The position numbers were made by a program, and so were the translations under genes. From IMG/VR virus record IMGVR_UViG_3300046559_001153, positions 124,001 to 188,000 of that record: 64,000 nucleotides of DNA, one strand, 5' to 3'. Below are positions 5,411 to 59,672 of this stretch, one piece after another (position 1 is the stretch's first letter; each line of letters opens with the position of its first letter). The notes beneath the pieces were generated by a model. It had not been told where the DNA came from. It was given only the letters and a program-made list of their open reading frames with translations, and made no database searches.

Positions 5411-5428
5411 TAACTTTTTACAAAGTTA
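5411..5428. promoter_or_regulatory. Palindromic motif TAACTTT-N4-AAAGTTA, copy 1
   Basis: TAACTTTTTACAAAGTTA, 14 nt before ATG 5443. Confidence 0.75.
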
Positions 5429-5442
5429 TTAGAGGAGTGAGG

Positions 5443-5826
5443 ATGACACCGAAGGAAGCTCTGATCGAAGCCAAGCAGCTCATTGAACGCTGGGGCTGGC
5501 TAAAGGGGTCCTTTGCGAGGGACCGTTACGGGAAGTCGATCTGGATCGCGGATGCGAAAGCCCATATTGCTGCTGGTGATTGTGGCGGATTCTGCGTTTC
5601 TGGCGCTATTGCAGCTGCAGTCGGCCTGTCTCCCGATTTCCAGTCCAGTCTCCGGCTAGTCGCGTTCTATGGCACGATTGACGCTACCAGGGCCCGATTC
5701 AGCCAGGCCGTTGGGGTGGTCAATCAGGATATCGCCGGGTGGAATGACAAGCCCGAACGAACCTTACAAGAGGTTCTGGACGCGTTGGACCGAGCTATTG
5801 CTCTCAGCGACGAGGTGTCAGCGTGA
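5443..5826 (+). CDS. DUF6197-like phage protein, paralog 1
   Basis: GW...FC.SGAI...WND...EV motifs shared with 9082 and 10614. The family name is recalled, not searched. Confidence 0.7.
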   Translation: MTPKEALIEAKQLIERWGWLKGSFARDRYGKSIWIADAKAHIAAGDCGGFCVSGAIAAAVGLSPDFQSSLRLVAFYGTIDATRARFSQAVGVVNQDIAGWNDKPERTLQEVLDALDRAIALSDEVSA

Positions 5827-6161
5827 TCACACCAGAACAACTCATGCAGATGGTGCGAGAGGCAGATGAAGGCGATCCTGACTCACCTCGACACATTAAG
5901 ACTATGGCGGCCGAGATACTGTGGCTATACAGCCGTCTCAGCTGCCTGGTCGAAATGCTCAAGCGATTTCCAGAAGACGCGGATCCCGATTTCCCGGAGA
6001 TCAGCCAATTGCATGGTCCTTTGTGGCACAAGGTGGCCCAGATGACCGGGCTGGGTTCGACGTCAGCAAAGCAGCTCTGCATGGTATTGAGACAAGATCC
6101 GGATCACATCAAACTTCAACCCGAACAGGAGACCGATGATGAGGGCGATAATCACGTGTGA
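5823..6161 (+). CDS. Hypothetical protein
   Basis: GTGA-coupled, 112 aa. Confidence 0.65.
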   Translation: MITPEQLMQMVREADEGDPDSPRHIKTMAAEILWLYSRLSCLVEMLKRFPEDADPDFPEISQLHGPLWHKVAQMTGLGSTSAKQLCMVLRQDPDHIKLQPEQETDDEGDNHV

Positions 6162-7356
6162 TTTGGGCTTCGGCGATAGCGGCAAGGGATCGATTGTTGA
6201 CGCACTGGTTCGTAAGTACCAAAGCAAGCTGGTCATTCGCTACTGCGGCGGCGCCCAGGCCTCGCACGCCGTAACAACTGAAGATGGCCGGGTGCACAAG
6301 TTCTCACAGTGGGGAGCGGGCACACTGGCCGGAGCGATGACTTACCTGCACTACCCGATGATCATCGATCCGTTGGCCATGCGGAACGAAGCTGAGTCAT
6401 TGAAATCCAACTTCGGATTCGGGGATCCGTGGAGGCTGCTGACCATTCATCCTGATTGTCTGATCGCAACGCGGGTGCACAAATACGTCAACCGACAATC
6501 GGCCGAGACAATTCAAAATGGTTCGTGCGGCATGGGGATTGGGGCTACACGGGAGTACTGGCTCAAGTACGGGTCTGACGCGATCGTTGCTTCTGATTTG
6601 GTGTCCAATTCGAGTCAGCTCGTCTGGTATGACAGGCTGATTGGTAAGCTCGAGCTAATGATTGCCAGGTACGAGTTACAGCACAAGTTCAGCGCTGTGC
6701 TTGAAGCCCGGGCTTTGCTAGATATTGCGACACTCCATTTGGCTTGGCGGGTTCTTCCATTAGAGTTCAAACAGCCCAAAAGTGACGAAGTCGTGATCTT
6801 CGAGGGATCTCAGGGGCTGCTGTTGGATCAGCATTACGGGTGTTCTCCTCACACGACGTGGAGTGATGTGACTGCGCGATCAGCTCTTGAACTCATTCAT
6901 CGAAATGACGTTATTTTCACGTCTGTTCGACAGCTCGGGATCATCCGAGCGTACATGACGAGACATGGCGCTGGCCCGTTGCCTACCGCGATGAGCCCCG
7001 AAGAGTTATCTGTGATGGGATTGAGCGATCCCTACAATCCTCACAACGAATACCAGGGCAGAATGCGATTTGGATGGCCTGATGTGGCTTTGCTCGAGTA
7101 CGCATTGGATAGTGCCCAAGGGATTGATTCGCTGGCAGTCAATTGCGTTGATCAGGTTGATGGCAAGTCGTTGCACGTTCGTATGCGTGCCGACGAGTGT
7201 CATCGTTGGACGGATTCCGTCTACAGATCGCCAGGTGAGTGGACGGCCTTGCCGTGGGTCGAGATCGCCGACACAATCGATAGCATCTGCCCGATCAGCG
7301 TTATCGGGCGTGGCCCGAAGGCTAGCGATAAAATCTTTTTGAAGGATTCATTCTGA
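6136..7356 (+). CDS. purA: Adenylosuccinate synthetase (PurA)-like ligase, divergent
   Basis: Motifs GFGDSGKG, GGAQASH, GSCGMGIG, IFEGSQGLLLD, RAYMTRHGAGPLPT, RFGWPD and LAVNCVD. Confidence 0.85.
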   Translation: MMRAIITCDLGFGDSGKGSIVDALVRKYQSKLVIRYCGGAQASHAVTTEDGRVHKFSQWGAGTLAGAMTYLHYPMIIDPLAMRNEAESLKSNFGFGDPWRLLTIHPDCLIATRVHKYVNRQSAETIQNGSCGMGIGATREYWLKYGSDAIVASDLVSNSSQLVWYDRLIGKLELMIARYELQHKFSAVLEARALLDIATLHLAWRVLPLEFKQPKSDEVVIFEGSQGLLLDQHYGCSPHTTWSDVTARSALELIHRNDVIFTSVRQLGIIRAYMTRHGAGPLPTAMSPEELSVMGLSDPYNPHNEYQGRMRFGWPDVALLEYALDSAQGIDSLAVNCVDQVDGKSLHVRMRADECHRWTDSVYRSPGEWTALPWVEIADTIDSICPISVIGRGPKASDKIFLKDSF

Positions 7357-7931
7357 TGCGAGAATCATTTCGAATGTGGTTTGAGGTGCCCGACCAACCT
7401 GACGCCGGGACGGTCGAGGAGTGGGACAAATTCGAAGAGGACGCAAGGAAGCATCATCCAGTACGCTTCTTCCTGTCGTGGACGTTGCCGATCCGGCTGT
7501 CACGCACATGGCGACAGCTTGTGCGTGAGCCGTGGTATTGGCTCAAGTGCCGTCTGTGGCACCAGTACAACGTCGTCCGCATTCAGACCCTGCCACCAAC
7601 GTGGAATGACCGGGACGAAGTGATGCTCCACGCGTGTTTCCAGTGCCTGGTCGATTTTATCGAGAAAGAAAATCCCTTTGAATACGGAGCAGGCGCCGAA
7701 GTGCAGGAGCCCAGGAGGAAAGCCGATATCGAACTGGTTGCTCTTTACGACTGGTGGATTTTACGTCCTGTGCTGCTGAGGAGAATCGACGATGTGATCG
7801 ACCGATATCCCAGAGGCACAGCCCCGCGGGACGCGTATGAGCAGGCCGGGATTTCCTACAGCGATCTTCGAGCTGAAGATCAGGCAATGTTGACCAGGCT
7901 CATCGCCGTTCGAAAGTACATGTGGACATGA
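7356..7931 (+). CDS. Hypothetical phage protein (Trp-rich)
   Basis: 191-aa ORF coupled to the upstream stop (TGATG). Confidence 0.7.
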   Translation: MRESFRMWFEVPDQPDAGTVEEWDKFEEDARKHHPVRFFLSWTLPIRLSRTWRQLVREPWYWLKCRLWHQYNVVRIQTLPPTWNDRDEVMLHACFQCLVDFIEKENPFEYGAGAEVQEPRRKADIELVALYDWWILRPVLLRRIDDVIDRYPRGTAPRDAYEQAGISYSDLRAEDQAMLTRLIAVRKYMWT

Positions 7932-7941
7932 AAGGGGCCGA

Positions 7942-8163
7942 ATGGCACGAGAATGGGCGGATGACAAGCATGGGGCGGAACGGATTCCGCCTTCTTGCTT
8001 GACTGAGGTGAAACGACGGGCACTGGCTCACGATTGGAAATCAGCGGCCGAATTGCTGGATCAACTGTGTACTCACAGTCGTTTGAAGAGTTTTGAAGCG
8101 TACCATCTGGCCACACATCTCTACAATGAAATCGAGAAGGAACGATCATGCAAGTCGTCGTAG
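7942..8163 (+). CDS. Hypothetical protein
   Basis: 73 aa with an AAAGGGG RBS. Confidence 0.55.
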   Translation: MAREWADDKHGAERIPPSCLTEVKRRALAHDWKSAAELLDQLCTHSRLKSFEAYHLATHLYNEIEKERSCKSS

Positions 8164-20673: not shown

Positions 20674-20711
20674 GAAGGGGCCGGCTCAATGTGAGCCGGA
20701 CCCCTTCTTTT
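20674..20711 (+). terminator. Rho-independent terminator separating the accessory and virion regions
   Basis: GAAGGGG-CCGGCTCA / TGAGCCGG-A-CCCCTTC stem followed by TTTT. Confidence 0.8.
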
Positions 20712-20728
20712 AGCTATCAGCTTGTCGG

Positions 20729-22620: not shown

Positions 22621-22638
22621 TAACTTTTCGAAAAGTTA
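22621..22638. promoter_or_regulatory. Palindromic motif, copy 2
   Basis: TAACTTTTCGAAAAGTTA (perfect palindrome), 12 nt before ATG 22651. Confidence 0.8.
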
Positions 22639-31567: not shown

Positions 31568-31681
31568 GCTGCGGAGGCTTGGTGTGATCAAAGCACACGA
31601 TGGCGAAAGCATCCCGGGATCAGTGTTGCCCGGCAGCCATGATTGGTATAAGACCCGTGGGTTCGATCCCCACCCGCAGCG
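31568..31681 (+). ncRNA. tRNA-like RNA (acceptor, D and T arms) lacking a canonical anticodon arm
   Basis: GCTGCGG/CCGCAGC acceptor, GCTT/AAGC D stem, GTGGG-TTCGATC-CCCAC T arm, and a 61-nt insert between the D and T arms. Confidence 0.55.
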
Positions 31682-31682
31682 T

Positions 31683-31700
31683 TAACTTTTCGTAAAGTTA
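31683..31700. promoter_or_regulatory. Palindromic motif, copy 3
   Basis: TAACTTTTCGTAAAGTTA, 20 nt before ATG 31721. Confidence 0.8.
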
Positions 31701-39634: not shown

Positions 39635-39652
39635 TAACTTTATAAAAAGTAA
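39635..39652. promoter_or_regulatory. Palindromic motif, copy 4 (one mismatch)
   Basis: TAACTTTATAAAAAGTAA, 5 nt before ATG 39658. Confidence 0.65.
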
Positions 39653-39657: not shown

Positions 39658-40029
39658 ATGACGGCACTGCTTACACCTCACCTGCTCGGCAATCACGGCT
39701 TGGTGCAATATGCCCATTTGAAGATCTGGGCTGAGCGTGGATTGATCCGTATCGAGCACACAGAAACTGGTCAGTACGAGATCTTGTCGGTTGCCGATGC
39801 GGCCAAGAGGGCCCTGGCAATCAGTGAGATGGCTCGATTGAGACGAAAGAATCCTAAGTGGGTCAAGTATTACGACGAGATCGCGGCACAAATGGATTTC
39901 GTGGACCGAATGCACGGTGTGCTCCAGAAAGCCCGCGAACAGGGCATGCCGACTGACCCGACAGCCCGACGGGATCTGACGCGAAGAATGCCGGTCACAG
40001 TGAGTGTCCCGGCTGATATCTATCTTTAG
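39658..40029 (+). CDS. Conserved phage hypothetical protein
   Basis: 123-aa ORF. Confidence 0.7.
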   Translation: MTALLTPHLLGNHGLVQYAHLKIWAERGLIRIEHTETGQYEILSVADAAKRALAISEMARLRRKNPKWVKYYDEIAAQMDFVDRMHGVLQKAREQGMPTDPTARRDLTRRMPVTVSVPADIYL

Positions 40030-41674: not shown

Positions 41675-44600
41675 ATGTCAATCCTGTCTGGCTCCGGCAG
41701 CCTGCTCCAGCCGATGCGCCCTGCGGCCCACGAGGATGAGCCTGACAGCCTCACAGACATGTCCAAAGCGCGTCAAAGGCTGTTTGACCACACCTTGACG
41801 GCTGCGCAAGGCCTGGAGCCCCTGGCGAACTCCAAGCACACGTTAAAGCTGACCGACGTCCACTATTCTGGCCCGGACGAGTATTCTCTAAAGGACCAGA
41901 AGAAAGCCATTCTGACAGGTGACACGCTTGGCCGGACGCTGAAAGGCACATTCCAGCTTCTGGATAACGTCACAGGCCAGCTGGTCGACCAGAAACGGGT
42001 GACACTGGCTAACGTGCCTTACCGGACGGACCGTGGTACGTTCATCCACAATGGGACTGAATACGCCGTTCGAAATCAGATGCGGTTGTTGCCTGGTGTC
42101 TTTACCCGTATTCGAGGCAACGGCGAGATTGAAGCCCACACGAACGTTATGCCTGGGAAGGGGCTGAGCCACCGCTACTTTCTAGATCCTGACAAAGGCG
42201 TGTTCTACATTCGCGTAGCCCAGTCCAAGACGCCGCTAGTGTCGTTGCTCACCGCAATGGGCGTGACCCACCATCAATTGCGTGACGCCTGGGGCCCCGA
42301 GTTGGCCGCGACCAACTTGACGCATAACGATCCGGCTGACGTAAAGAAACTGGCCGGGAAATTTCTCCCGCGGATCCCCGAGAATCAGACCGAGGCGCAC
42401 ACGACTGAGCAACTGGTAAATGCCTTTCAGGCCATGGAGCTCGATCCGGAAGTCACTAAACGAACGCTCGGGCACCCATTTACCAATGTCGGACCGGAGA
42501 CCATTCTTCGAACGACACAGAAACTGCTTCAATTGCAAAAGGGCGAAGTTGAGCCCGACGATCGTGACCACCTGGCCTACCAGAAAATCATGGCGCCCGA
42601 GGATTTGTTCTCGGAACGGATTCGTCGCGATGCTGGCAACATTCGCCGTCAGCTGTTGTTCAAAGCCAGTCAGCGTGGCAATCTGCAGGGCATTGGTTCC
42701 CGACCGTTCCAGAAGCAATTGAACTCGGTCATCCTCACCAGCGGTGTCGGTACGGGTCTTGAGGAAACATCACCGCTCGAACTGCTGGACAAGATGTCAA
42801 CGATCACCAGCATGGGTGTCGGTGGACTACCAAGCACGACAGCCATTCCGTTGGAGTCCCGAGCCGTACAGCCAAGCCATCTCGGATTCATGGATCCACT
42901 GAAGACGCCCGAAAGCGAGGCGGCTGGCGTTATTCTGAATATCGCCGGACAGGTCCGTCGTAAGGCTGATGGGCAGCTCGCCAAACAATTCACCAATCTG
43001 CACACGGGGCAACTCGAGTGGCGTACCCCGCAGGACGTGGCTGATTCAGCCATCGCCTTCCCGGGTGAAATGGCCAAACCGGGCAAACGAATCATAGCCA
43101 TGTTGAATGGTAAGCTGCAGTATGTGTCCAAAGCCGATGTCAAATACGAGCTGCCGCATTTCGAACACGTCTTCAGCGACGTCACCAATCTGGTGCCGAT
43201 GAAGTCGGCTTTGAAGGGCCAGCGGGCAGTGATGGGTGCCCGTATGTTGACGCAAGCCCTGCCGCTCGAGAACCCCGAAGCCCCATTCGTTCAGTCGGCT
43301 GTTCCGGGAACGGGCGGGCAGAAGAGTTTTGACGAACACTTCGGTGGATTCATGGGTGCCGTGCGAGCCAAGCAGGGTGGTCAGGTCACTGCCGTATCGC
43401 CGGAAGCCATCACGGTCAAGCACGACGACGGAACGACGCAGAACTACGAGTTGTATGACTCGTTTCCGTTCAATCGCCGTAGCCGACTGCACAATACGCC
43501 AATGGTGCAACCGGGCCAGCGTGTCGGTCCGGACGATCTTCTGGCTAAGTCCAACTTCACCAACGACAACGGGGCAATCGCGATCGGCAAGAACGCCTAC
43601 ATCGGATACATGCCGTATGGAGCCGGCACCTACGAAGACGCCCAGCTGGTGTCGGAGAGCTTCGCCAAGAAACTGCGATCAGAACATTTGTACCAGCACG
43701 ACGCGACCTGGGGTGACGCACTCGATAAGAAAGGCAAAGCGCCATACGTGTCGCTGTTCCCGTCGAAGTTTGACCGAAAGCAGTTGGACACGATCGACGA
43801 GGATGGGGTCGTCAAGCCGGGCACGGTTGTTGATTACGGCCACCCACTCATTCTGCTGGCAAAGGGGCGAGAGCACTCGCAAAGCAAAGTGCATCGCAAG
43901 GGCCAGCTACAGCACACCGACGCGTCGGTGACCTGGTCGTACAACTCACCCGGTATCGTCCGCGACGTAGTGAAGACAGACAAAGGACCGATGGTCACTG
44001 TGACGTCTATGCGGTCGACACAGGAGTCAGACAAGTTGAGTGACCGATTCGGCGCCAAGGGTGTTATCGGCAAGATTCTGTCGGACGACTTGATGCCGCG
44101 TGACAGCACGGGTCGCCCATTCGACATGTTACTGAATCCGGCTGGTATCCCGTCGCGACTCAATCCGGTGAAGATCCACGAAGCCACACTCGGCAAGATT
44201 GCGGAAAAGACTGGCAAGCCGTACAAAATTGAGGATTTTTCGAACATTGCCGACCTGCGAGCCTTCGTCGAACAGGAAGCCCAGAAGCATGGCGTACCCG
44301 ACACAGAGACGGTCTTCGACCCAGGTACCAACAGATACATCCCCGGCGTGAAGACTGGCGTGCAGTGGATCATGAAGCTGCACCATATCGCCGAAGACAA
44401 AGAACAGGGTCGCGGTGCCTCGGGTGGTTACACACTCAGCGGTGTACCGGCCAAGGGTGGTGACGGTGAGTCAAGTAAGAAGCTGTCCATGGGGGAAACG
44501 AATGCCCTGTTGTCTCACGGTGCGTTGAATCTGCTGCGTGATTCGCAATTGTTACGAGGCCAGCGAAACGAACCATATTGGCTGGCCTTCATGCAGGGGC

Positions 44601-46093
44601 ACCGCCCGCCCGAGCCCGGTATCCCGCTTGTTTACGAGGAATTCATCAACGAATTGAAAGCTGCTGGGATCAACCCAGTTCGCAACGGGGCCAGCATGAA
44701 CGTCATGGCCTTGACGAACAAGGACATTGACCAGTTGTCGGGCGGCCGCGAATTGCAAAATGGGAACACGGTCAACTTTGACGGTGATCTGAGCCCGGTG
44801 GCCGGCGGCTTGTTCGATCCAGCTTTGACTGGCGGGCATATGGGCCGCCGATGGTCGCACGTAACGCTGGCCGACCCGATGCCCAATCCGGTGATGGAAG
44901 AGCCTATACGTAAACTGCTGGCCCTGACTAAGAACAAATTCGAAGGGGTTCTGGCTGGGACTGAATCGATCGGTTCGCACGGTACAGGACCGCAAGCTCT
45001 GTTCAAAGCCCTGCAGGGGATCAATCTGGACAAGGAGCTTTTGCTCGCCAGGATGCAGATCAAGTCGGGCAAGAAAACAGCCCGTGATGTGGCCGTTCGC
45101 AAACTAGGGTATCTCAAAGCAGCCAAGTCGCTGGGGATCCACCCGTCAGACTGGATGCTCGACAAAGCACCAATTCTTCCCCCCCTCTTTCGTCAGGTGG
45201 CGAAGATTTCCGATTCGGGCCAACCAATTATTTCCGATGCCAATTACCTTTACAAAGAGCTGATTGACGCGAATACGACGCTCAAGAAGCTGAAGGGGGT
45301 GGTGGGTGAAAACGTGGGTCAAGAACGCCTTGCGTTATATAACTCGTTCAAAGCAGTCACTGGCCTGGGCGACCCAAGCCATCCGAAACTGGTCGAGAAG
45401 GGAGTCAAAGGCCTGCTTGCCGGGATCTTCGGAAGTAGTCCCAAGTGGGGCTCAGTCCAGTCCCGATTACTCAGTACCCCTGTGGATATTGTTGGGCGTG
45501 CCACTGTACAGCCCAACGCCGACCTCGACATGGATTCCATTGGACTTCCCGAAGAACGAGCCTGGACCGTCTACAAAAACTTCATAGTCCGTCGCCTTAA
45601 ACGCCAAGGCATGCCGTTGACGAATGCCCTGCAGGCTCACAAGGATCAGACCCCGCTGGCGAAGAAAGCCCTGCTTGATGAGCTGGAGACGCGACCAGTT
45701 ATCTACAGCCGGGCGCCCATCCATCATAAGTACGGGATCATGGCCGCTTGGCCGCAGCTGGTGAAAGGTAACGCCGTTCACTTGTCACCGCTGGTGACGG
45801 TTGGATTTGGTGCGGACTTTGATGGCGATCAGATGAACTACCATGTGCCTGTGAGTGATGCGGAAGTGCAGGACGCTGTCGAGCGAATGCTGCCGTCTCG
45901 CAATTTGATCAGCCCGGCCGACTTTCGAACGCCCATGTTCATGCCACGGCACGAAATGCTAATGGGATTGTTCGAATCAACCAGACCGGATAGAATTGGT
46001 CGAAGTATCACATTTCGCAATAAGCAAGACGCTATTGCCGCTTATCGACGCGGAGAGTTGACCGTGCAGGATTCGGTGACAATTCTCCATTGA
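41675..46093 (+). CDS. rpoBC: DNA-directed RNA polymerase beta subunit fused to the N-terminal catalytic half of beta'
   Basis: Beta motifs: VPYRTDRGTFIHNGTE, DPLKTPES, DKLSDRFGAKGV, LNPAGIPSRLN, KLHH, ELKAAGIN. Beta' motifs after about 44696: GGLFD, PILPP, SDANYLY, PVDIVGR, SRAPIHH and catalytic GADFDGDQM (45809-45829). Confidence 0.95.
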   Translation: MSILSGSGSLLQPMRPAAHEDEPDSLTDMSKARQRLFDHTLTAAQGLEPLANSKHTLKLTDVHYSGPDEYSLKDQKKAILTGDTLGRTLKGTFQLLDNVTGQLVDQKRVTLANVPYRTDRGTFIHNGTEYAVRNQMRLLPGVFTRIRGNGEIEAHTNVMPGKGLSHRYFLDPDKGVFYIRVAQSKTPLVSLLTAMGVTHHQLRDAWGPELAATNLTHNDPADVKKLAGKFLPRIPENQTEAHTTEQLVNAFQAMELDPEVTKRTLGHPFTNVGPETILRTTQKLLQLQKGEVEPDDRDHLAYQKIMAPEDLFSERIRRDAGNIRRQLLFKASQRGNLQGIGSRPFQKQLNSVILTSGVGTGLEETSPLELLDKMSTITSMGVGGLPSTTAIPLESRAVQPSHLGFMDPLKTPESEAAGVILNIAGQVRRKADGQLAKQFTNLHTGQLEWRTPQDVADSAIAFPGEMAKPGKRIIAMLNGKLQYVSKADVKYELPHFEHVFSDVTNLVPMKSALKGQRAVMGARMLTQALPLENPEAPFVQSAVPGTGGQKSFDEHFGGFMGAVRAKQGGQVTAVSPEAITVKHDDGTTQNYELYDSFPFNRRSRLHNTPMVQPGQRVGPDDLLAKSNFTNDNGAIAIGKNAYIGYMPYGAGTYEDAQLVSESFAKKLRSEHLYQHDATWGDALDKKGKAPYVSLFPSKFDRKQLDTIDEDGVVKPGTVVDYGHPLILLAKGREHSQSKVHRKGQLQHTDASVTWSYNSPGIVRDVVKTDKGPMVTVTSMRSTQESDKLSDRFGAKGVIGKILSDDLMPRDSTGRPFDMLLNPAGIPSRLNPVKIHEATLGKIAEKTGKPYKIEDFSNIADLRAFVEQEAQKHGVPDTETVFDPGTNRYIPGVKTGVQWIMKLHHIAEDKEQGRGASGGYTLSGVPAKGGDGESSKKLSMGETNALLSHGALNLLRDSQLLRGQRNEPYWLAFMQGHRPPEPGIPLVYEEFINELKAAGINPVRNGASMNVMALTNKDIDQLSGGRELQNGNTVNFDGDLSPVAGGLFDPALTGGHMGRRWSHVTLADPMPNPVMEEPIRKLLALTKNKFEGVLAGTESIGSHGTGPQALFKALQGINLDKELLLARMQIKSGKKTARDVAVRKLGYLKAAKSLGIHPSDWMLDKAPILPPLFRQVAKISDSGQPIISDANYLYKELIDANTTLKKLKGVVGENVGQERLALYNSFKAVTGLGDPSHPKLVEKGVKGLLAGIFGSSPKWGSVQSRLLSTPVDIVGRATVQPNADLDMDSIGLPEERAWTVYKNFIVRRLKRQGMPLTNALQAHKDQTPLAKKALLDELETRPVIYSRAPIHHKYGIMAAWPQLVKGNAVHLSPLVTVGFGADFDGDQMNYHVPVSDAEVQDAVERMLPSRNLISPADFRTPMFMPRHEMLMGLFESTRPDRIGRSITFRNKQDAIAAYRRGELTVQDSVTILH

Positions 46094-51036: not shown

Positions 51037-51070
51037 GGCTGGTAGGGAATTTCCCTATCAGCCTTTTTTT
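51037..51070 (+). terminator. Rho-independent terminator
   Basis: GGCTGGTAGGG/CCCTATCAGCC stem followed by T7. Confidence 0.85.
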
Positions 51071-51089
51071 AGCTATCAGCCTGACCATC

Positions 51090-52455: not shown

Positions 52456-52694
52456 TGTACATCGAAGCCATCGAACGATTCGGTAAGCCGCCCGTGCGGT
52501 TGGAAGTCAGTCAGGTCGTCATTTACCGAGACGACGGAACCCCCATCTCGCTGGCCAGTTTGTACGGCCCCGATGGGGCCATTTTCGTTGAAACGGCCGA
52601 GGATCCGGAAAAATTCAACAAGGCCCTGCAGACACTGGGGATCGATAAAACAGTCATCGTCGACAACCTGGTCATGTCCGAACCAACCCAATAA
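52455..52694 (+). CDS. Small hypothetical protein
   Basis: TGATG-coupled; MYIEAIERFGKPPVRLEVSQVVIY. Confidence 0.65.
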   Translation: MYIEAIERFGKPPVRLEVSQVVIYRDDGTPISLASLYGPDGAIFVETAEDPEKFNKALQTLGIDKTVIVDNLVMSEPTQ

Positions 52695-52709
52695 CTTTTT
52701 ACAAAGTTA
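52692..52709. promoter_or_regulatory. Palindromic motif, copy 5
   Basis: TAACTTTTTACAAAGTTA (identical to copy 1), 22 nt before ATG 52732. Confidence 0.8.
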
Positions 52710-52731
52710 CAGAGACCAGCAGGTAGGCAAG

Positions 52732-55700
52732 ATGCCCGCGACCTTCATAGGGAAAATGGGTCAGCTGCTGGTCAACGAGGCTCTGCCCGAAGATCTGCGT
52801 AACGGTAAGACCCTGGATTCAAGGGGCTTGACCGACCTGCTGCGGGATGTGGCTGAACGTCACCCCGACAAGTACCGGGACATCTCACACAAGTTGACCC
52901 AGCTGGGTGAAGACGCAGCTCAGCAACTCGGCGGCTATTCGTTCGGGCTCAATGCCATGCGACGGGCCGGGTCAGCCAATGTCATTCGCGATCGCATCAA
53001 AAGCCAGGTTCAGTCACTGCTCGACAATGACAACCTGTCAGATGATGCACGCGAGTCCCAGATCGTCAAACTCCTGGGTCAGGCCCAGTCAGAACAAGAG
53101 AACGCCGTCTACGACGAGAGTTTGAAAGAGAACAATCCGATCGCCTTGCAGATCAAGTCAGGCGCTCGCGGCAAGAAGATGGCTCTCAATTCTCTGCGTG
53201 GGTCCGATCTGCTGTATGTCGACCATCGCGACCGGCCAGTGCCCATCCCCGTCCTGCGGAGTTACCCTGAGGGCCTGTCGCCGGCCGAGTATTGGGCTGG
53301 GGCCTATGGTGCTCGTCACGGCATTGTCAGTGTGAAGCTGGGCACAGCCCAGTCAGGCTTCCTGGCGAAACAACTCAATCAAGCGACCCACCGGCTGATT
53401 GTGACGCATGAGGATGACGCTCCGGTCGATACGGTCCGAGGCCTGCCAGTCCCTGTCGACGATAACGACAATGTGGGGGCCTTGCTGGCCCATCCGGCTG
53501 GTGGTTTTGGGCGGAACACGGTTCTGACGCCCAAGGTTCTGAAGTCCCTGCATGATGGCGGCATTCAGAGAATTCTGGTACGCAGCCCGACTGTTGGCGG
53601 GGCACCTGATGGGGGTCTCTACTCACGCGATGTTGGCATTCGAGAAACTGGCGGTCTGCCGCCCAAAGGAACGTTCTCCGGTCTGCAGGCCGGTCAGGCG
53701 ATCTCTGAGCCGTTGTCGCAGGCCACCTTGTCCGCCAAGCACGCAGGGGGCGTTGCCGGAGCATCCAAATCAGTGTCAGGCTTTGCCTGGATCAACGCCC
53801 TGGTTCAGATCCCCAAGGTATTTCCTGGCGGGGCAACGCATTCAGAAGTAGACGGGCGTGTGCAGCAGATTACCAAGGCACCTGGCGGCGGTTTGCACGT
53901 GCAGGTGAACGGACTGGAGCATTACGTGCCGCACGGGCTGGCTTTGACAGTTGCCCCGGGCGACGCGGTTGAAGCTGGCGACGTGCTCAGTGAGGGCATT
54001 CCCAGCCCGGCCGAGATCGTCAAGCACAAGGGAATTGGTGAAGGTCGCCGGTACTTTGTGGATGCCATGCGTAAAGCATTGACCGACTCTGGTGTTCGAA
54101 ACAATCGCCGAAATCTCGAACTCATCAGTCGTGGTCTGATCAATCACGTCGAGCTCGACGCGGAGATCGGCGAACACGCGCCAGACGACGTTGTCCCATT
54201 CGACACGATCGAACGGGATTACGAGCCGAGAGAAGGCAGTCACACGCTGCCTGTCCACCAGGCAATCGGCCAGTATCTCGAGAAGCCCTACCTGCACCAC
54301 ACGATTGGTACGAAGGTCAAATCGAGCATGTTGCCGGACTTCAAGCATTTTGGAGTTGAATCGGTTCACGTGCACAAAGATCCGCCGCTATTCCATCCGC
54401 TCATGGTTCGCGGTATGTACAACTTGCAGCACGACCCGGACGCCATGACAAGGAATCTAGGTTCAGGGCTGCAGGCAAGCTTCCTGGACTCGGTCCACCG
54501 TGGCGGCGGCAGCGACGAAAAGGGTACCAGCTATGTTCCCGGCCTGGCCCGTACTGTGGATTTTGGCCGCATTGGCGTTATCCGGCCGACTGTGGTTACA
54601 CCGCAGAGATCGACTATGAAAATCGCAGCTGGCAGCCCGATTGCCCCGGCTCTCGACCCGAAACCGGCTCCCATCAAACCACTGGCGCCACCACAGCCTC
54701 AAATAAAACCGATTGCTCCTCCACCGTCGCCGGCTTTGCAGGCGAAGCCTCAATCTGTGCTGGGCGATAGTTCGATCAACGGGTTCGGTGACTTCTTCCA
54801 TCATGCCGGTAATCTGCTGCGTGGGCCCGGGTACGACGCCGGGATGGCACCGGCAACTGCCGGTTTCAAGAACACGATGACGCCGCAGCAGTTTGGCCAA
54901 CAGATGCGGACTGATCTTCCCGGTCTGCCTAATCCGGTTGCACCAGCCGCACAACCCGGAGTATGGGATCAAGCGAAAGCCATAGCGCCTGGCCTGGCTA
55001 CCAATCTCGGGGTTAATGTAGCTGGGCAGCAGATAGCAAAAAATACGTTGGTGCGAGCCGTTCCCAGATTAGGAGTAGGTGCCGCCTCAAAGCTCTTGCC
55101 TCTCGGTATCGGCGCCGCAGTTGCCGAGCCGATTGGGTGGCTCGGTAAAAAGACCGGAATTCCAGGCTTCGAAAACGATGCAGCATATGACACCAATGCG
55201 TATCGTCAAGAGGCCGAAGGTTTGCACTACGGGATGCCGGCCGGCTGGCGTCAGGACACCAATCGACCGTGGTATATTCGAATGGGAGACTGGTTGGCCA
55301 ATGACGCAGGAACAGCCGTAATGCAGCCTCAGACGGCCGTCATGAACGCGTTTGGCAAGTCGAGCGATGACGCCTTGGGAATTCCTTCTCGCGACGAGAT
55401 GGGAGACTTATCCAAGCTCGAAACGGGCAAGCTCTATGACCTGTTTACACAGCTCCATAACGCCACCAAAGCCGGTCCCCACACTGATCTGAGGATTGGC
55501 GATCCGGAGCAGGGGCTGCACTCTTGGGCCGTGCCGAAGGGTTTACCCGAGTCTGGGAAGAAGCATCTGGCTGTCCACCAGCCAATTCACGAGCATTCCT
55601 ACGGGGGCTGGTCGGGCACGATTCCCGAGGGCGAATACGGGGCCGGTACGGTCAAGAGTCAGATCAAGGGCAAGGCCCTGGTGACCGAGTCGGGTCCGGG

Positions 55701-56883
55701 CAAACTGCATTTTACGACAGCTCACATGAAGCATCCCGAGCGGTTCACTGTGGTGGCGCCAAAAAGCTTCGGTGAAAACAATCACCTGCTGCTCAACACG
55801 ACGCCGACCGAGCCGCTGCCGTACCAGAAGATCCACTACAAGAAAGTTCCGACCGAACAGGTCGAAGGAAAGTTGAAGGAGTTAGAACCCGGTTCGTCGG
55901 TGCAGGCCAAGATTGACGGTGCATCGAGCCTGGTCAAACTGCTCAAGGATCAGCTCGAACTGTATTCGTACCGGGCATCAAAGCCGACAGGAAAACCAAT
56001 CATTCACACGGAGAAGGTGTTACATGGCCGGCCTCGGATTGAGATCCCTCCTGAGTACCACAACAGCATCCTGCGCGGTGAGTTACACGGGGTCAAGCAA
56101 GACTCCGAAGGAAAAGAAACGGTTATTCATCCCAGCGAACTTGGTGGTATCCTCAACTCAACGATTGCTCACTCGCTGGCAAAACAAGAGACCTCAGGCG
56201 TTCGGCTCCGTAACGCACTGTTCGACATTCAACAGGTTGGCAACACGCCAATTGACTTCTCCAAGACGCCATATTCTGAACGTCGGGAACACTTGAAGAG
56301 CATTCTGCCGTCGCTGCCGCAGGACATTTTTCACTTGACCGACGAAGCCAAGACACCGGAAGATGCGCTGAAGTTGTGGAAAGACATTGGTAGCGGGGAT
56401 CACCCGAAAACTGAGGAAGGAATCGTTATCCACTCTCCAACGGGCAAGCCCCAGAAGGCTAAGTACATTGAAGATCACGACGTTCACATCCGCGGTATTT
56501 TCCCTGGCGAAGGCCGTCTTGCTGGAACTCATGCCGGCGGCTTTGAGTACTCTGCTGAGCCTGATGGTCCTATTCTCGGCCGTGTTGGCACTGGCTTTTC
56601 TGACGATGTTCGTCGCCAGATGCATGATCGACCTGACGATTTCGTGGGGCGGGTTGCCCGGGTGAAGTCCCAGGAGAAGTTGCAGTCGGGTGCGTTGAGA
56701 GCTCCGGCTTATATCGCTCTCCACGAAGATTACCCAGTGTCGTCGGCTTTGAATAAGGCGGCCGAGCTAGAACGCGTCCGTCTGCGTGTGAAAGAATTGG
56801 CAGAGAAAAAGGCGACCGCTTCTCCAATTTCTCTGGCCAGAGAACGCCTTCAAGCTATCCGAGCGAAAAATTTGGGCCTATAA
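52732..56883 (+). CDS. rpoC: Fusion protein: RNA polymerase beta' C-terminal half + Pro/Gly-rich linker + LigD 3'-phosphoesterase domain + ATP-dependent DNA ligase
   Basis: Beta' motifs: KSGARG, SYPEGLSPAEY..GAYGARHG...TAQSGFL, GLQAGQAISEPLSQATLSAKHAGG. PE motifs: QLH...HTDLR, SWAVPKG, H..SY, GTIPEGEYGAGTV. Ligase motifs: KIDG, RGEL, LFDI, EEGIVI, KAK, GRVGTGFSD. Start moved to ATG 52732 (AGGTAGG RBS). Confidence 0.92.
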   Translation: MPATFIGKMGQLLVNEALPEDLRNGKTLDSRGLTDLLRDVAERHPDKYRDISHKLTQLGEDAAQQLGGYSFGLNAMRRAGSANVIRDRIKSQVQSLLDNDNLSDDARESQIVKLLGQAQSEQENAVYDESLKENNPIALQIKSGARGKKMALNSLRGSDLLYVDHRDRPVPIPVLRSYPEGLSPAEYWAGAYGARHGIVSVKLGTAQSGFLAKQLNQATHRLIVTHEDDAPVDTVRGLPVPVDDNDNVGALLAHPAGGFGRNTVLTPKVLKSLHDGGIQRILVRSPTVGGAPDGGLYSRDVGIRETGGLPPKGTFSGLQAGQAISEPLSQATLSAKHAGGVAGASKSVSGFAWINALVQIPKVFPGGATHSEVDGRVQQITKAPGGGLHVQVNGLEHYVPHGLALTVAPGDAVEAGDVLSEGIPSPAEIVKHKGIGEGRRYFVDAMRKALTDSGVRNNRRNLELISRGLINHVELDAEIGEHAPDDVVPFDTIERDYEPREGSHTLPVHQAIGQYLEKPYLHHTIGTKVKSSMLPDFKHFGVESVHVHKDPPLFHPLMVRGMYNLQHDPDAMTRNLGSGLQASFLDSVHRGGGSDEKGTSYVPGLARTVDFGRIGVIRPTVVTPQRSTMKIAAGSPIAPALDPKPAPIKPLAPPQPQIKPIAPPPSPALQAKPQSVLGDSSINGFGDFFHHAGNLLRGPGYDAGMAPATAGFKNTMTPQQFGQQMRTDLPGLPNPVAPAAQPGVWDQAKAIAPGLATNLGVNVAGQQIAKNTLVRAVPRLGVGAASKLLPLGIGAAVAEPIGWLGKKTGIPGFENDAAYDTNAYRQEAEGLHYGMPAGWRQDTNRPWYIRMGDWLANDAGTAVMQPQTAVMNAFGKSSDDALGIPSRDEMGDLSKLETGKLYDLFTQLHNATKAGPHTDLRIGDPEQGLHSWAVPKGLPESGKKHLAVHQPIHEHSYGGWSGTIPEGEYGAGTVKSQIKGKALVTESGPGKLHFTTAHMKHPERFTVVAPKSFGENNHLLLNTTPTEPLPYQKIHYKKVPTEQVEGKLKELEPGSSVQAKIDGASSLVKLLKDQLELYSYRASKPTGKPIIHTEKVLHGRPRIEIPPEYHNSILRGELHGVKQDSEGKETVIHPSELGGILNSTIAHSLAKQETSGVRLRNALFDIQQVGNTPIDFSKTPYSERREHLKSILPSLPQDIFHLTDEAKTPEDALKLWKDIGSGDHPKTEEGIVIHSPTGKPQKAKYIEDHDVHIRGIFPGEGRLAGTHAGGFEYSAEPDGPILGRVGTGFSDDVRRQMHDRPDDFVGRVARVKSQEKLQSGALRAPAYIALHEDYPVSSALNKAAELERVRLRVKELAEKKATASPISLARERLQAIRAKNLGL

Positions 56884-56904
56884 TCGGTCTGAAAGGATTT
56901 CGCA

Positions 56905-57111: not shown

Positions 57112-57150
57112 ATTTTTGCTGATCGAACTTCTCGTCAAGGATGACGCCAC

Positions 57151-59652
57151 ATGTCCATTCTGCTTGCAGGTAGCCAGTCGCTCGCGAAACGCGCTAACAT
57201 CGGCGGCGATCCTGAAGGGAACTTCGAACAATCGTTCGCCTCGCTGGGCTATAACTTCCTGAGTGAAAAAGCCCCCAGGCTGCTCGAGCACATGCTGGGC
57301 TTCCAGCTGCTTGACCGCAACGACGACATGTCACGAGCTGTCGGCGTTTATGGTTTCCAGGCTGATACCAAGCGACTGTACATGCCTTTGTTTTTCCTGA
57401 ATGGGGAACTTCGCGGCCAGGAATTGCTCTTCGTTCAGAACAAGGACGAGGGGCAGTTTGTCCCCATGAAGGAGAACTGGGTCAACTTCCTGCTCAGCAA
57501 GTCGCCACACATCATGGGCGAGGCGTCGCAGAAGGATGTGTTCCAGATGGGCGGGATGTGGCCGGACCTGCGTCCATTCACGAACGCTTACCGCGGTAGC
57601 AAATACTCATGCGACATGCCGCGTATCCAAGAGTGGGCCAAGCCGTTCATGCCCGTCTATGCTCGTCTCTGTACGACCAACCCTCTGCGTGACACTCGTT
57701 ACGCGAAGATCGCGACAGCCCAAAACCTGCTGAGCGAATCTCCGATGGCCGTGAAAATGGCCATCGATCTGTGTGACCGATTCCCGAACGTCAAGGCGGC
57801 CATGCACCGGTGTTACGGAGCGGACGTCTTTGAGAAGGCTCTACTGACCATCAAAGCCCGACTGACCAAAGAGGCGTCGGATCGAGGCAGCATTCTCTCG
57901 TTCAAGCCGCAGAAGGTGGCAGTCGCGCGTTCCCGATCGAGCATACTGCCCGACCTGACCCCCCAGGACCCCGTTAAGCTGGGGGCTTTGAAGATTATGC
58001 GGGTCGATCCGAATGAACGTTTTACGCACAACATTCCCGATCGATCACGCGAAGAGGCCACTGGCGACACCCGCCGCGGCGCCGTCGTGATCACCGACAA
58101 ACGCTTGCCGCAGGACAAGTCGACCCTGTACAACACGGCGATCCATACGGCCTACACGAATCCAACTCGATCTTCCCTGGCTGAGGTGCTGGCCGGGGCC
58201 GGCAAGTTCGAGAAGTGCCTGATCATCCATCGCCCATACTCCGGCAAGGGGCAGCACACCTTCGTGACTGTCGTCCGAGCGGAAGGTCAAAGTTCAGCCC
58301 GCAACTGGATCAACTCGGACGCTACGAACATTTACGTTCGCCAGCCGATTGAAAGCCAGTTCGATTTCAAGACCTGGTTCGACGGATTGTCGTCCGCCAA
58401 GATGACCAAGGACAGCACGTATGTCGCGCTGACCGGTGACGGCCGCGGTACATTGCCGTTTACAGTGAACAGCGTTCTGGATGATGACTGTTACCGAGTC
58501 CAATACGAGACCGGACACAAGCGACCACAGTACGCTCACATGTCGCGAAATTACAGCACCAACGGATTGGGCGACCGCGACACGCCGCCCAATCCGTCGG
58601 GTTACACGGATTACAATGCCTTGCTGCATTTGAACGGCCGTAAGGGCTCCAGCATCCACGCCGTTGGTGGCGAACTGTGGATCCCCGACAGCGCTAAAAT
58701 CCTCAAGATCCAAGACCCATTTGACCCAGAAGATGACAGTGACGAAGACTCAATTTCGCCGCTCCAGCCTGGCAACCTGATTGACGTGCAGAATCAGATC
58801 TACCAGAAAACAGCGTCCCTCAAGCTCTGGACGGTTGGGTCAGACGAAATCGCTCTGTCGACAAAGTTTGGCACGCGCCGCATGAGCAAACAAGCCGCTT
58901 ACGTGGCGATGGTTGCTGACCTTGGGCTGGGGATTGATGATGCAGACGCGGCCATGGACAAAGTGACCAAAGCCGGTTCGGCCAAGTTCAGGATTCTGTA
59001 CGGACCGTTCTACCAGAAGCGGGCTGACGCGTGGCCCGGCTACGGCGGCGACCTGCTTGATCAGGGCCCGAGTGCTCCCCGAGAAGGGCCGCCACCGACC
59101 GGATCCGGCTTCCCGTGGTACGGCGGAGCGATCAACAAGTATCCGCAGGAGGAGTACCTGGAAGTTCCAGGACTCAATGCCTACTCAACCAATCCCTGGA
59201 TCTACGATCCCACTCGTATCCCCGATCCAGGGACTGGCCCCGGCGCCTACGGCACAGACCAGGCCGGGTCGGGAAGCTTCTCTCAGGGTCAGGATTCGTC
59301 ATCCCAGGGCGTCCAAAATGCGGCGGCATCTGGCCAGAAGGAAGTCTTCGATACGACCATCTTGAGCAACCTGCTCAACTCGGTTCGACAGGAGAGCGTG
59401 GTCGATCGCTACTTGAGCGACCTGATGACTGGGCTTGACCGAATCGGGCGTATTCTGTTCAGCTTCTACTGGCACATGGATGACGTCAAAGAGCACTACG
59501 GTGCGGCCGAGACGCCCGATCTCATCGATGCCATGCGAAATGCGTTTGAAGAATGCGGCGACGTCACGTTGAAACTTCGTCAGAACTCGATGAACCCTGA
59601 CATGGGTGAAATGGGATCGCCGAACGTTGAAGACGTGGCTCGTGCTGACTGA
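57151..59652 (+). CDS. Large conserved putative virion protein
   Basis: 833 aa with multiple KxA motifs (KRAN, KIAT, KEAS, KTAS, KRAD). Confidence 0.78.
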   Translation: MSILLAGSQSLAKRANIGGDPEGNFEQSFASLGYNFLSEKAPRLLEHMLGFQLLDRNDDMSRAVGVYGFQADTKRLYMPLFFLNGELRGQELLFVQNKDEGQFVPMKENWVNFLLSKSPHIMGEASQKDVFQMGGMWPDLRPFTNAYRGSKYSCDMPRIQEWAKPFMPVYARLCTTNPLRDTRYAKIATAQNLLSESPMAVKMAIDLCDRFPNVKAAMHRCYGADVFEKALLTIKARLTKEASDRGSILSFKPQKVAVARSRSSILPDLTPQDPVKLGALKIMRVDPNERFTHNIPDRSREEATGDTRRGAVVITDKRLPQDKSTLYNTAIHTAYTNPTRSSLAEVLAGAGKFEKCLIIHRPYSGKGQHTFVTVVRAEGQSSARNWINSDATNIYVRQPIESQFDFKTWFDGLSSAKMTKDSTYVALTGDGRGTLPFTVNSVLDDDCYRVQYETGHKRPQYAHMSRNYSTNGLGDRDTPPNPSGYTDYNALLHLNGRKGSSIHAVGGELWIPDSAKILKIQDPFDPEDDSDEDSISPLQPGNLIDVQNQIYQKTASLKLWTVGSDEIALSTKFGTRRMSKQAAYVAMVADLGLGIDDADAAMDKVTKAGSAKFRILYGPFYQKRADAWPGYGGDLLDQGPSAPREGPPPTGSGFPWYGGAINKYPQEEYLEVPGLNAYSTNPWIYDPTRIPDPGTGPGAYGTDQAGSGSFSQGQDSSSQGVQNAAASGQKEVFDTTILSNLLNSVRQESVVDRYLSDLMTGLDRIGRILFSFYWHMDDVKEHYGAAETPDLIDAMRNAFEECGDVTLKLRQNSMNPDMGEMGSPNVEDVARAD

Positions 59653-59654
59653 CG

Positions 59655-59672
59655 TAACTTTTTGAAAAGTTA
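59655..59672. promoter_or_regulatory. Palindromic motif, copy 6
   Basis: TAACTTTTTGAAAAGTTA, 14 nt before ATG 59687. Confidence 0.8.

What the first reader, a model, noticed from the sequence alone, without database searches (positions are those of the whole stretch)
5411..59672. Six copies of an AT-rich 18-bp palindrome TAACTTT-N4-AAAGTTA directly upstream of genes
Seen at 5411, 22621, 31683, 39635 (one mismatch), 52692 and 59655. All are at gene boundaries, 5-22 nt before a start codon, including the beta'-ligase gene. The arms are conserved while the 4-nt centre varies, which is striking in GC-rich DNA. Inference: this is either an operator for a dimeric phage regulator, a hairpin-type promoter for the phage's own RNAP (N4 vRNAP recognises hairpin promoters), or an RNA processing hairpin.
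Basis: partly seen in the sequence, partly recalled or inferred. Interest (0 to 1): 0.7.

Follow-up and report, generated by a model that had tools for sequence, protein, structure and literature searches.

The report
Evenly spaced palindromic sites in jumbo phage
The six AT-rich palindromes are real: they belong to 22 evenly spaced, two-fold symmetric protein-binding sites in an uncultivated 224-kb soil phage that has its own RNA polymerase, related phages carry the same number of sites with a different sequence, and the sites most likely gate transcription.

Summary
Five exact copies and one one-mismatch copy of TAACTTT-N4-AAAGTTA lie in the window (0.02 expected by chance), each 5-22 nt before a start codon.

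- **Host genome.** The window is part of a 224,270-bp phage genome from soil, read almost wholly in one direction. It has one multisubunit RNA polymerase and a sigma-like gene.
- **Genome-wide set.** There are 22 sites with consensus TAACTTTT-YR-AAAAGTTA and unconserved flanks. Half-sites never occur alone, and 21 of 22 sit in gene spacers.
- **Not a hairpin.** Arm variants are never compensated: 0 of 26 here and 5 of 138 across six genomes. This points to double-stranded DNA bound by a symmetric dimer.
- **Relatives.** Five fully fetched relatives carry their own palindrome. The three 98-100% complete ones carry 21-23 copies.
- **Spacing and position.** Spacing is more regular than random in all six genomes, and positions are partly syntenic (before the DNA polymerase and beta' genes).
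- **Inside genes.** In two lineages the sites often lie inside genes, so "directly upstream of genes" is largely a result of tight gene packing.

My best reading (about 0.4) is operator-type gates that block or time RNA polymerase entry into blocks of about 10 kb. Rivals are a compact phage promoter and genome-architecture or origin sites. No binding protein was identified and no transcript data exist.

The parts
5411..5428 (.). Palindrome copy TAACTTTTTACAAAGTTA. It follows the tmRNA and tRNA-His cluster and a hairpin plus T-run that ends 3 nt upstream. It lies 14 nt before ATG 5443 (127-aa DUF6197 protein).
22621..22638 (.). Palindrome copy TAACTTTTCGAAAAGTTA, a perfect 18-bp palindrome. It starts right after the TGA stop of a 606-aa ORF and lies 12 nt before ATG 22651 (546-aa ORF, no family match).
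31683..31700 (.). Palindrome copy TAACTTTTCGTAAAGTTA. It lies 20 nt before ATG 31721 (520-aa AAA ATPase) and is preceded by a tRNA-like 3' fragment.
39635..39652 (.). Palindrome copy with one mismatch, TAACTTTATAAAAAGTAA. It lies 5 nt before ATG 39658 (123-aa core protein of unknown fold). A site at this junction is present in 5 of 6 genomes.
52692..52709 (.). Palindrome copy TAACTTTTTACAAAGTTA. Its TAA is the stop codon of a 79-aa ORF. It lies 22 nt before ATG 52732 (RNA polymerase beta' C-terminal half fused to a LigD-type ligase). A site before beta' is present in 4 of 6 genomes.
59655..59672 (.). Palindrome copy TAACTTTTTGAAAAGTTA. It starts 2 nt after the stop of an 833-aa ORF and lies 14 nt before ATG 59687 (146-aa ORF).

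Best explanation
The motif is a double-stranded DNA binding site for a two-fold symmetric protein, a homodimer that is probably phage-encoded. The protein reads two TAACTTTT half-sites across a flexible central YR step. About 22 such sites punctuate the one-directional 224-kb genome, roughly one per 10 kb, mostly filling the short spacer between a stop codon and the next ribosome-binding site.

I read them as operator-type gates, comparable to the stoperators of mycobacteriophage L5. When occupied, the dimer sits on or just upstream of the point where the downstream message must already exist. It therefore blocks RNA polymerase from entering or starting the next block of genes. Release of the protein, for example by titration as the genome replicates, would time expression along the genome.

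- **Shown:** the symmetry, copy number, spacing, placement and conservation across the clade.
- **Inferred:** that a protein binds, that it is phage-encoded, and that its effect is repressive.
For: **The motif is real and is used as a pair.**
- It is the most over-represented 8-mer in the genome.
- There are 22 sites with sharply bounded 18-bp conservation and no conserved -35, -10 or other flank.
- All 11 TAACTTTT words and 10 of 11 AAAAGTTA words in the genome lie in the sites.

**The recognition is symmetric and on duplex DNA.**
- 26 arm deviations are all single-arm, 13 left and 13 right, with none compensated.
- Over six genomes the count is 5 compensated against 133 uncompensated.
- The extra conserved flanks in relatives are mirror images: ATT...AAT in G010 and GATC...GATC in G012.
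- The closest relative (L121) changed both arms together, to TTACTTTTCGAAAAGTAA.

**The system is shared across the clade.**
- Lineage-specific palindromes occur at 21-23 copies in the three relatives that are 98-100% complete. The two less complete relatives and the other fragments carry 6-24 within 2 mismatches.
- Spacing is regular: CV 0.47-0.56 against 0.93 for random placement, P <= 0.009 in each of six genomes.
- Positions are partly syntenic.

**The geometry fits a block rather than an activator.**
- Real Shine-Dalgarno sequences start right at the 3' edge of the site in about 10 of 15 cases. Any transcript start must therefore lie within or upstream of the site, so a bound dimer would occlude rather than activate.
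- A site sits at a convergent gene junction with no downstream plus-strand start, in this genome and in G012.

**Precedent.** The Cluster O mycobacteriophage 17-bp dyad repeats were interpreted by their authors as dimer binding sites (PMC4351075).
Against: - No binding protein was found. About 70 proteins were scanned and only a sigma-like protein has a helix-turn-helix.
- The one positional candidate does not model as a known DNA-binding fold.
- No integrase or resolvase is present. The temperate-phage precedents for dispersed repressor sites therefore may not apply.
- No conserved promoter lies next to the sites for a repressor to act on.
- Sites inside essential genes in relatives would truncate those transcripts while the protein is bound.
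- No transcript, binding or protein data exist for this phage.
Confidence: 0.4

Rival explanations
1. The motif is itself a compact promoter for the phage's own multisubunit RNA polymerase, with or without the sigma-like protein. The transcript would start at or near the 3' edge of the palindrome, giving short leaders that carry only the ribosome-binding site.
For: - Many near-identical, lineage-specific motifs of about 20 bp at about 10-kb spacing in a one-directional genome is the classic pattern of phage-polymerase promoters.
- Jumbo phages with multisubunit polymerases have lineage-specific AT-rich early-promoter motifs centred near -10 (PMC7598289). A start just past the 18-mer would put its centre near -10.
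- Sites precede the major modules: DNA polymerase in 5 of 6 genomes, beta' in 4 of 6, and Mre11 in 3 of 6.
- Five of 128 sites follow an intrinsic terminator by 3-12 nt.
- A promoter inside an upstream ORF still serves all downstream genes, so the intragenic sites of relatives are compatible.
Against: - Perfect two-fold symmetry, with mirror-image flanks and equal left and right variants, has no role in a directional promoter. It would also drive antisense transcription.
- In G004 the motif is GC-rich in a 43% GC genome, so easy melting is not the common theme.
- The two conserved minus-strand genes, including terminase, have no site upstream in any genome.
- One site lies at a convergent junction.
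- A different motif, a T-run plus TAGCTATCA, is conserved across the whole clade. It fits a polymerase- or sigma-recognised element better.
Confidence: 0.25
2. The sites have a DNA-level role unrelated to individual genes. They could be anchor or loading sites for a genome-organising protein, in the manner of matS, SlmA or Noc sites or the KorB sites of plasmid RK2. Alternatively they could be multiple replication origins bound by a symmetric initiator.
For: - Copy number is nearly constant in the near-complete genomes and spacing is significantly regular in all six genomes.
- Positions are conserved at the kilobase scale but not at the base scale.
- In G004, 18 of 24 sites are inside long ORFs, and in G008, 8 of 15. 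In G004 they are translated as the benign peptides SGDVST or VETSP. Gene boundaries are therefore not required.
- There is no significant preference for the start-proximal end of long spacers.
Against: - In G011 the palindrome has no stop codon in any frame, yet 18 of 23 sites are still intergenic.
- In this genome 21 of 22 sites are intergenic, although two of three frames are open.
- No partition, condensin-loader or origin-binding protein was recognised.
- Nothing is known about this phage's replication.
Confidence: 0.2
3. The motif acts as a nucleic-acid hairpin. It would be either an RNA processing, stability or translation element, or an extruded DNA hairpin promoter of the N4 type.
For: - The sequence can be drawn as a 7-bp stem with a 4-nt loop.
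- Each lineage keeps an inverted repeat while the sequence changes.
Against: - Within genomes, arm changes are almost never compensated: 5 of 138.
- The predicted stability is about -2.4 kcal/mol here, and 0 for the recurrent TACC variant.
- The would-be loop is itself symmetric (T-Y-R-A, CCGG, ACGT), which a loop does not need.
- No T7- or N4-type polymerase was found.
- Sites inside ORFs in relatives cannot all be processing sites.
Confidence: 0.03
4. The palindromes are selfish short repeats that spread through the genome, for example as footprints or targets of a homing-type endonuclease, and have no function for the phage.
For: - They can sit in-frame inside genes in some lineages.
- A core gene has a weak HNH match.
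- The Cluster O repeats appear to mediate deletions (PMC4351075).
Against: - Site positions are shared between lineages whose palindromes differ completely.
- Copy number is nearly constant in the near-complete genomes and spacing is regular.
- The copies carry no flanking repeat or target duplication.
Confidence: 0.05

Closest known systems
Cluster O mycobacteriophage 17-bp dyad repeat (TGTTCGG-N3-CCGAACA; PMC4351075)
   Same: - Dozens of near-invariant inverted-repeat copies are spread over a phage genome.
- The arms are fixed and the centre is variable.
- Positions are a mix of short intergenic, near-start and intragenic.
- There is no consistent orientation.
- The authors interpreted them as dimeric protein binding sites of unknown regulatory consequence.
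   Different: - The sequence is unrelated.
- Here there are about 22 copies per 224 kb rather than 34 per phage genome.
- Spacing is regular.
- The system is traced across a deep clade in which each lineage has its own palindrome.
- The phage has its own RNA polymerase and no detected integration genes.
Stoperators of mycobacteriophage L5 and Cluster A; dispersed C1 operators of phage P1; conserved inverted repeats of phiC31
   Same: - Many copies of one repressor site are scattered through the genome.
- They often lie in short spacers or overlap stop or start codons.
- They act by blocking RNA polymerase at many points.
   Different: - L5 and P1 sites are asymmetric, and L5 sites have one orientation relative to transcription. 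Ours are symmetric.
- Those phages are temperate and the binding protein is the immunity repressor. No lysogeny genes were found here.
- No binding protein is known here.
Early promoters of jumbo phages with multisubunit RNA polymerases (phiKZ, AR9; PMC7598289)
   Same: - The motif is phage-specific, AT-rich and highly conserved.
- It is found bioinformatically upstream of operons and differs from phage to phage.
- It is centred near -10.
   Different: - Those motifs are about 10 nt long and are not described as palindromic: the review contains no occurrence of 'palindrom'.
- Those phages have two split polymerases. This phage has one, made of a beta-beta'N fusion plus beta'C.
- Transcript starts are not mapped here.
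MerR-family operators (18-20-bp dyads between the -35 and -10 elements; from my own knowledge)
   Same: The 7-4-7 or 8-2-8 dyad of 18 bp has the geometry typical of MerR-type dimers. A neighbouring small protein gave weak MerR_1 matches.
   Different: - No -35 or -10 hexamers flank the dyad.
- The start codon is too close for that promoter geometry.
- The small protein models as four strands plus a helical hairpin, not a winged helix.

Membership tests
N4-type hairpin promoter | A stem whose base pairing is maintained, with compensatory changes among copies. | tested here: not met
   0 of 26 arm deviations are compensated in this genome, and 5 of 138 in six genomes.
N4-type hairpin promoter | A single-subunit (T7/N4-like) virion RNA polymerase encoded by the phage. 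| tested here: inconclusive
   PF00940 gives no match in the genome, but the control genomes did not match either. Only a multisubunit polymerase was found.
Intrinsic terminator or RNA processing hairpin | A stable, G+C-rich or long stem; for terminators, followed by a T-run. | tested here: not met
   The stem is 7 A-T-rich pairs worth -2.4 kcal/mol, and 0 for the TACC variant. No T-run follows.
Sigma-70-type promoter | -35 and -10 hexamers at 16-18 bp spacing, with the start about 7 nt downstream. | tested here: not met
   Information content is near 0 at almost every position outside the 18 bp; the two abutting positions reach about 0.4-0.5 bits. The start codon lies 2-22 nt after the motif.
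Dimeric-regulator operator (generic) | Two-fold symmetric site with half-sites used only in pairs. | tested here: met
Dimeric-regulator operator (generic) | A cognate DNA-binding dimer that binds the site. | not testable with these tools
   No candidate was confirmed. The co-folding job was not run by the tool.
L5-type stoperator | An asymmetric site in one orientation relative to transcription. | tested here: not met
   The site is symmetric. The central CA and TG forms occur in both orientations (7 against 3, my count).
L5-type stoperator | Many copies in short intergenic spaces or overlapping stop or start codons. | tested here: met
   21 of 22 sites are intergenic, P about 1e-14 or less.
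Cluster O-type dyad repeat | Tens of near-invariant dyad copies across the genome, with a variable centre and both intergenic and intragenic positions. | tested here: met
   compared with PMC4351075. This is a resemblance of kind, not of sequence.
Jumbo-phage polymerase promoter | Transcript 5' ends at a fixed distance from the motif. | not testable with these tools
   No RNA run was listed for this phage.
MerR-type operator | A dyad lying between -35 and -10 elements of a promoter with a long spacer. | tested here: not met
   No conserved flanking hexamers.

The most novel reading that the evidence does not exclude
A large, uncultivated clade of 190-225-kb phages, more than 800 beta' relatives, shares a genome punctuation system. 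About 22 evenly spaced dyad sites have a sequence that co-evolves with an unrecognised symmetric DNA-binding protein.

The system would work in one of two ways. It could be a roadblock-based timer for a genome transcribed in one direction, with release coupled to replication by titration. Or it could be a set of multiple replication origins or loop anchors. Either would be a mode of genome control not described for tailed phages.
Probability: 0.25. Interest if true: 0.8.

Novelty: new variant of a known kind. Interest (0 to 1): 0.55.

Why it matters
Dispersed dyad repeats have been noted in a few phages without any function being assigned.

- **A larger comparative set.** The same kind of element appears here as a conserved, countable system in a deep clade of soil and aquatic jumbo phages with their own RNA polymerase. 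Copy number is similar in the near-complete genomes, spacing is regular, sites are partly syntenic and the sequence is lineage-specific. That provides a natural covariation data set of hundreds of genomes for finding the binding protein and its recognition code.
- **What each outcome would mean.** If the sites gate or start transcription, they define the transcription units of an otherwise unannotatable phage group. If they do something else, they point to an unknown layer of genome organisation in large phages.

Tried and rejected
- **RNA evidence.** No RNA run was listed. DNA contigs of four runs laid on two sites showed no variants, joints or end pile-ups.
- **Binding-protein search.** Pfam and PHROG scans of about 70 proteins found no classical repressor.
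- **The 123-aa candidate.** The protein encoded just after site 39635 looked MerR-like by language-model features and by weak Pfam matches in 13 of 63 family members. Its confident model is four strands plus a helical hairpin. The best structural match, Pur-alpha at Z 7.0, is at noise level. I do not claim it binds the site.
- **Co-folding.** The protein-dimer-plus-DNA job was accepted but not folded by the tool, so it is no evidence either way.
- **Terminator association.** Only 5 of 128 sites have an intrinsic terminator just upstream. The argument [quoted passage not shown] is dropped. Several other terminators in this genome are followed directly by a ribosome-binding site with no motif.
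- **Start against stop proximity in long spacers.** About 12 against 9, not significant (my count).
- **Host regulon idea.** An exact-pattern scan of 185,579 species genomes gave scattered single matches, mostly in genomes of typically low-GC groups. The two contigs of about 222 kb that matched hold only one copy each.
- **Other enriched words.** GGTTAATG and GATTAACC are coding, not regulatory.
- **Close relatives.** A single-protein query of IMG/VR found none. An alignment query was needed.
Full report
**1. The observation**

Five are exact and one has a single mismatch. Shuffles give 0.02 expected. All lie 5-22 nt upstream of a plausible start codon:

| Window position | Gap to start codon (nt) | Downstream gene |
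|---|---|---|
| 5411 | 14 | DUF6197 protein, 127 aa |
| 22621 | 12 | 546-aa ORF, no family match |
| 31683 | 20 | AAA ATPase, 520 aa |
| 39635 | 5 | 123-aa ORF |
| 52692 | 22 | beta' C-terminal half fused to LigD phosphoesterase and ATP-dependent ligase |
| 59655 | 14 | 146-aa ORF |

**2. The genome**

The window is bases 124,001-188,000 of a 224,270-bp virus record. Its 127-bp terminal repeat is a length typical of an assembler overlap, which suggests a circular assembly. GC content is 55.5%. The record is present in many soil and rhizosphere metagenomes.

- Almost all genes are on one strand.
- The genome has one multisubunit RNA polymerase. It consists of a beta-beta'N fusion at window 41675-46093 and beta'C at 52732-56883.
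- It has a sigma-like protein and a PolA-type DNA polymerase with a UDG-like domain.
- It also encodes Mre11-, Rad50- and RecA-like proteins and a terminase on the minus strand.
- No T7-like polymerase, integrase or resolvase was found.
- Most proteins match no known family.

**3. Anatomy of the element in the whole genome**

There are 9 exact sites, 8 with one mismatch and 5 with two mismatches, making 22 in all.

- The consensus is the 18-bp palindrome TAACTTTT-YR-AAAAGTTA. Conservation ends sharply at its edges, and nothing is conserved in the 30 bp on either side.
- TAACTTTT is the most over-represented 8-mer in the genome.
- Every one of its 11 copies, and 10 of 11 copies of the complementary word, lie in the sites. 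The eleventh is part of a three-mismatch site. Half-sites are therefore used only as pairs.
- 21 of 22 sites are outside called genes (P about 1e-14 or less).
- The usual layout is stop codon, 0-8 nt, palindrome, Shine-Dalgarno sequence, start codon. The TAA of the motif often serves as the upstream stop.

**4. Hairpin or duplex site?**

- In this genome all 26 departures from the arm consensus affect one arm only, 13 in the left arm and 13 in the right. None is compensated.
- The recurrent TACC variant occurs four times in each arm and never in both.
- Over six genomes the tally is 5 compensated against 133 uncompensated.
- The RNA hairpin would be worth -2.4 kcal/mol, and 0 for the TACC variant.
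- The centre keeps symmetry (T-Y-R-A). In relatives, extra conserved flanks are mirror images.

This is what a symmetric protein dimer reading duplex DNA produces. A hairpin under selection for pairing would not produce it.

**5. Relatives**

The beta' N-terminal domain has more than 800 metagenomic relatives at about 50-59% identity, many on contigs of 190-226 kb. 52 IMG/VR loci were fetched.

| Genome | Size | CheckV completeness | Motif | Sites (2 mismatches or fewer) | Sites inside ORFs |
|---|---|---|---|---|---|
| This genome (G000) | 224 kb | 100% | TAACTTTT-YR-AAAAGTTA | 22 | 1 |
| G010 | 219 kb | 98% | (ATT)CTAAAAAACGTTTTTTAG(AAT) | 21 | 3 |
| G011 | 214 kb | 100% | CCAAAATACGTATTTTGG | 23 | 5 |
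| G012 | 224 kb | 100% | (GATC)..AAAACCGGTTTT..(GATC) | 23 | not scored (gene calls unreliable at 69% GC) |
| G004 | 190 kb | 92% | AGTGGAGACGTCTCCACT | 24 | 18 |
| G008 | 157 kb | 76% | TTAAAATCYRGATTTTAA | 15 | 8 |

- None of the relatives examined for the window's motif has it within three mismatches (L014-L016 and L122). The closest relative, L121, has it only in a form changed in both arms. Instead, a different 16-24-bp palindrome recurs in each lineage.
- L016 has TCCAATCTTAAGATTGGA and L052 has TTCATAAGCACTTATGAA.
- In L121, where the 123-aa protein is 79% identical, the motif is TTACTTTTCGAAAAGTAA. That is one substitution made in both arms.
- The sequence therefore evolves in concert on all sites and on both arms. 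The system itself is kept, and in the near-complete genomes so is its copy number.

**6. Spacing and position**

- Spacing is more regular than random in every genome (CV 0.47-0.56 against about 0.93; P <= 0.009 each).
- Mapped through 56 core genes, positions are partly conserved:
  - before the DNA polymerase gene in 5 of 6 genomes;
  - before beta' in 4 of 6;
  - after the 354-aa gene that precedes the 123-aa gene in 5 of 6;
  - before Mre11 in 3 of 6;
  - inside the 3' part of an 871-aa gene in three lineages, including the one intragenic site of this genome;
  - at a convergent junction at the 3' end of a conserved minus-strand gene, in this genome and in G012.
- In G004, 18 of 24 sites are inside long ORFs, and in G008, 8 of 15.
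- In G004 the intragenic sites are translated as SGDVST or VETSP.
- One site sits at the same domain junction of the same protein in G004 and G012, although the two palindromes are unrelated.
- In long spacers the site is near the start about as often as near the upstream stop (my count).

It mainly reflects tight spacers, and a motif that carries stop codons and AT-rich codons in a GC-richer genome.

**7. What it does**

The sites are not sigma-70 promoters, because there are no flanking hexamers. They are not terminators, and intrinsic terminators are rarely adjacent: 5 of 128 sites.

Real Shine-Dalgarno sequences begin at the 3' edge of the site in about two thirds of cases. The downstream message must therefore begin within or upstream of the site. 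That geometry excludes an activator site for a downstream promoter. Two coherent models remain:

- a symmetric protein that occludes or blocks (a gate or operator);
- a promoter recognised directly by the phage polymerase, with the start at the edge of the motif.

The symmetry evidence favours the first, and the convergent-junction site fits it as well. The promoter model has support of its own:

- It fits the general pattern of phage-polymerase promoters.
- It fits the report that jumbo-phage early promoters are lineage-specific AT-rich motifs centred near -10 (PMC7598289).

It does not explain the following:

- the symmetry;
- the GC-rich motif of G004;
- the absence of sites upstream of the two minus-strand genes.

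The regular spacing, and the tolerance of intragenic positions in some lineages, keep a DNA-level role open (organiser sites or origins).

I therefore commit to gating operators at about 0.4. The promoter reading is at about 0.25, architecture or origins at about 0.2, selfish repeats at 0.05 and hairpins at 0.03.

**8. The binding protein**

It was not found. The 123-aa protein encoded right after site 39635 is a core gene in all six genomes. Its family has about 176 clusters.

- It gave weak MerR-like signals.
- Its confident model (pLDDT 88) is four strands plus a helical hairpin, with no significant structural match.
- The co-folding job was not executed.

**9. Comparison with what is known**

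The closest described phenomenon is the 17-bp dyad repeat of Cluster O mycobacteriophages, which has more than 30 copies. Its authors proposed dimeric protein binding and could not assign a function (PMC4351075).

L5 stoperators, P1 C1 operators and phiC31 conserved inverted repeats (from my own knowledge) work in the way I propose. They belong to temperate phages and, for L5 and P1, are asymmetric.

This is a new variant of a known kind. What is new is the conservation across a clade, the similar copy number in the near-complete genomes, the regular spacing and the concerted change of sequence.

Noticed in passing
window 4712-4985 and 4985-5059: The phage carries a full-length tmRNA gene (Rfam RF00023, 117 bits), immediately followed by a tRNA-His gene. 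Both lie just upstream of the palindrome at 5411.
   Followed up: partly
window 20711-20719 and 51070-51078; also genome 20820 and 194777: A second motif is a G+C-rich hairpin and T-run followed directly by TAGCTATCA(G). There are 4 copies here. Unlike the palindrome, its sequence is conserved in all six related genomes, typically at 1-4 copies each. In three copies here, sigma-70-like -35 and -10 boxes follow. In others the start codon is only 7-12 nt away. It could be the clade's conserved promoter or terminator signal.
   Followed up: partly
window 52732-56883: The C-terminal half of RNA polymerase beta' is fused to a LigD-type 3'-phosphoesterase and an ATP-dependent DNA ligase. In relatives the same beta' domain carries other C-terminal additions, including P-loop kinase-like and Hint/intein-like domains, or none.
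   Followed up: partly
window 41675-46093: A single 1472-aa ORF corresponds, by position and by Pfam hits in relatives, to a fusion of the beta subunit (Rpb2 domain 6) with the N-terminal half of beta' (Rpb1 domain 2). It is conserved in all relatives.
   Followed up: partly
window 31640-31682: The sequence just upstream of the palindrome at 31683 looks like the T-arm and acceptor 3' half of a tRNA (GTGGGTTCGATCCCCAC...). Neither ARAGORN nor Rfam calls it. It may be a tRNA fragment.
   Followed up: no
genome 38645-39850 and 45427-47280 (outside the window; loci L006, L007): Only two genes are conserved on the minus strand in all six genomes. One is a 401-aa protein with no family match and the other is the terminase large subunit.
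   Followed up: partly
window 39658-40029: This small core protein has a confident predicted fold of four strands followed by a long helical hairpin, with no significant match in PDB or AlphaFold clusters. Its C-terminal motif is strongly conserved (EQG.P.D...RR) and its N-terminal part is variable.
   Followed up: yes
relative G004 (loci L091-L100): The 18-bp palindrome of this lineage is embedded in-frame in many proteins as SGDVST or VETSP. At four sites an in-frame ATG follows 9-10 nt later, or overlaps the end of the site. In one case it marks the start of a domain that also exists as a separate gene.
   Followed up: partly
genome 63122-66397 (locus L008:3122-6397): The family A DNA polymerase carries an N-terminal uracil-DNA-glycosylase-like domain.
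   Followed up: no
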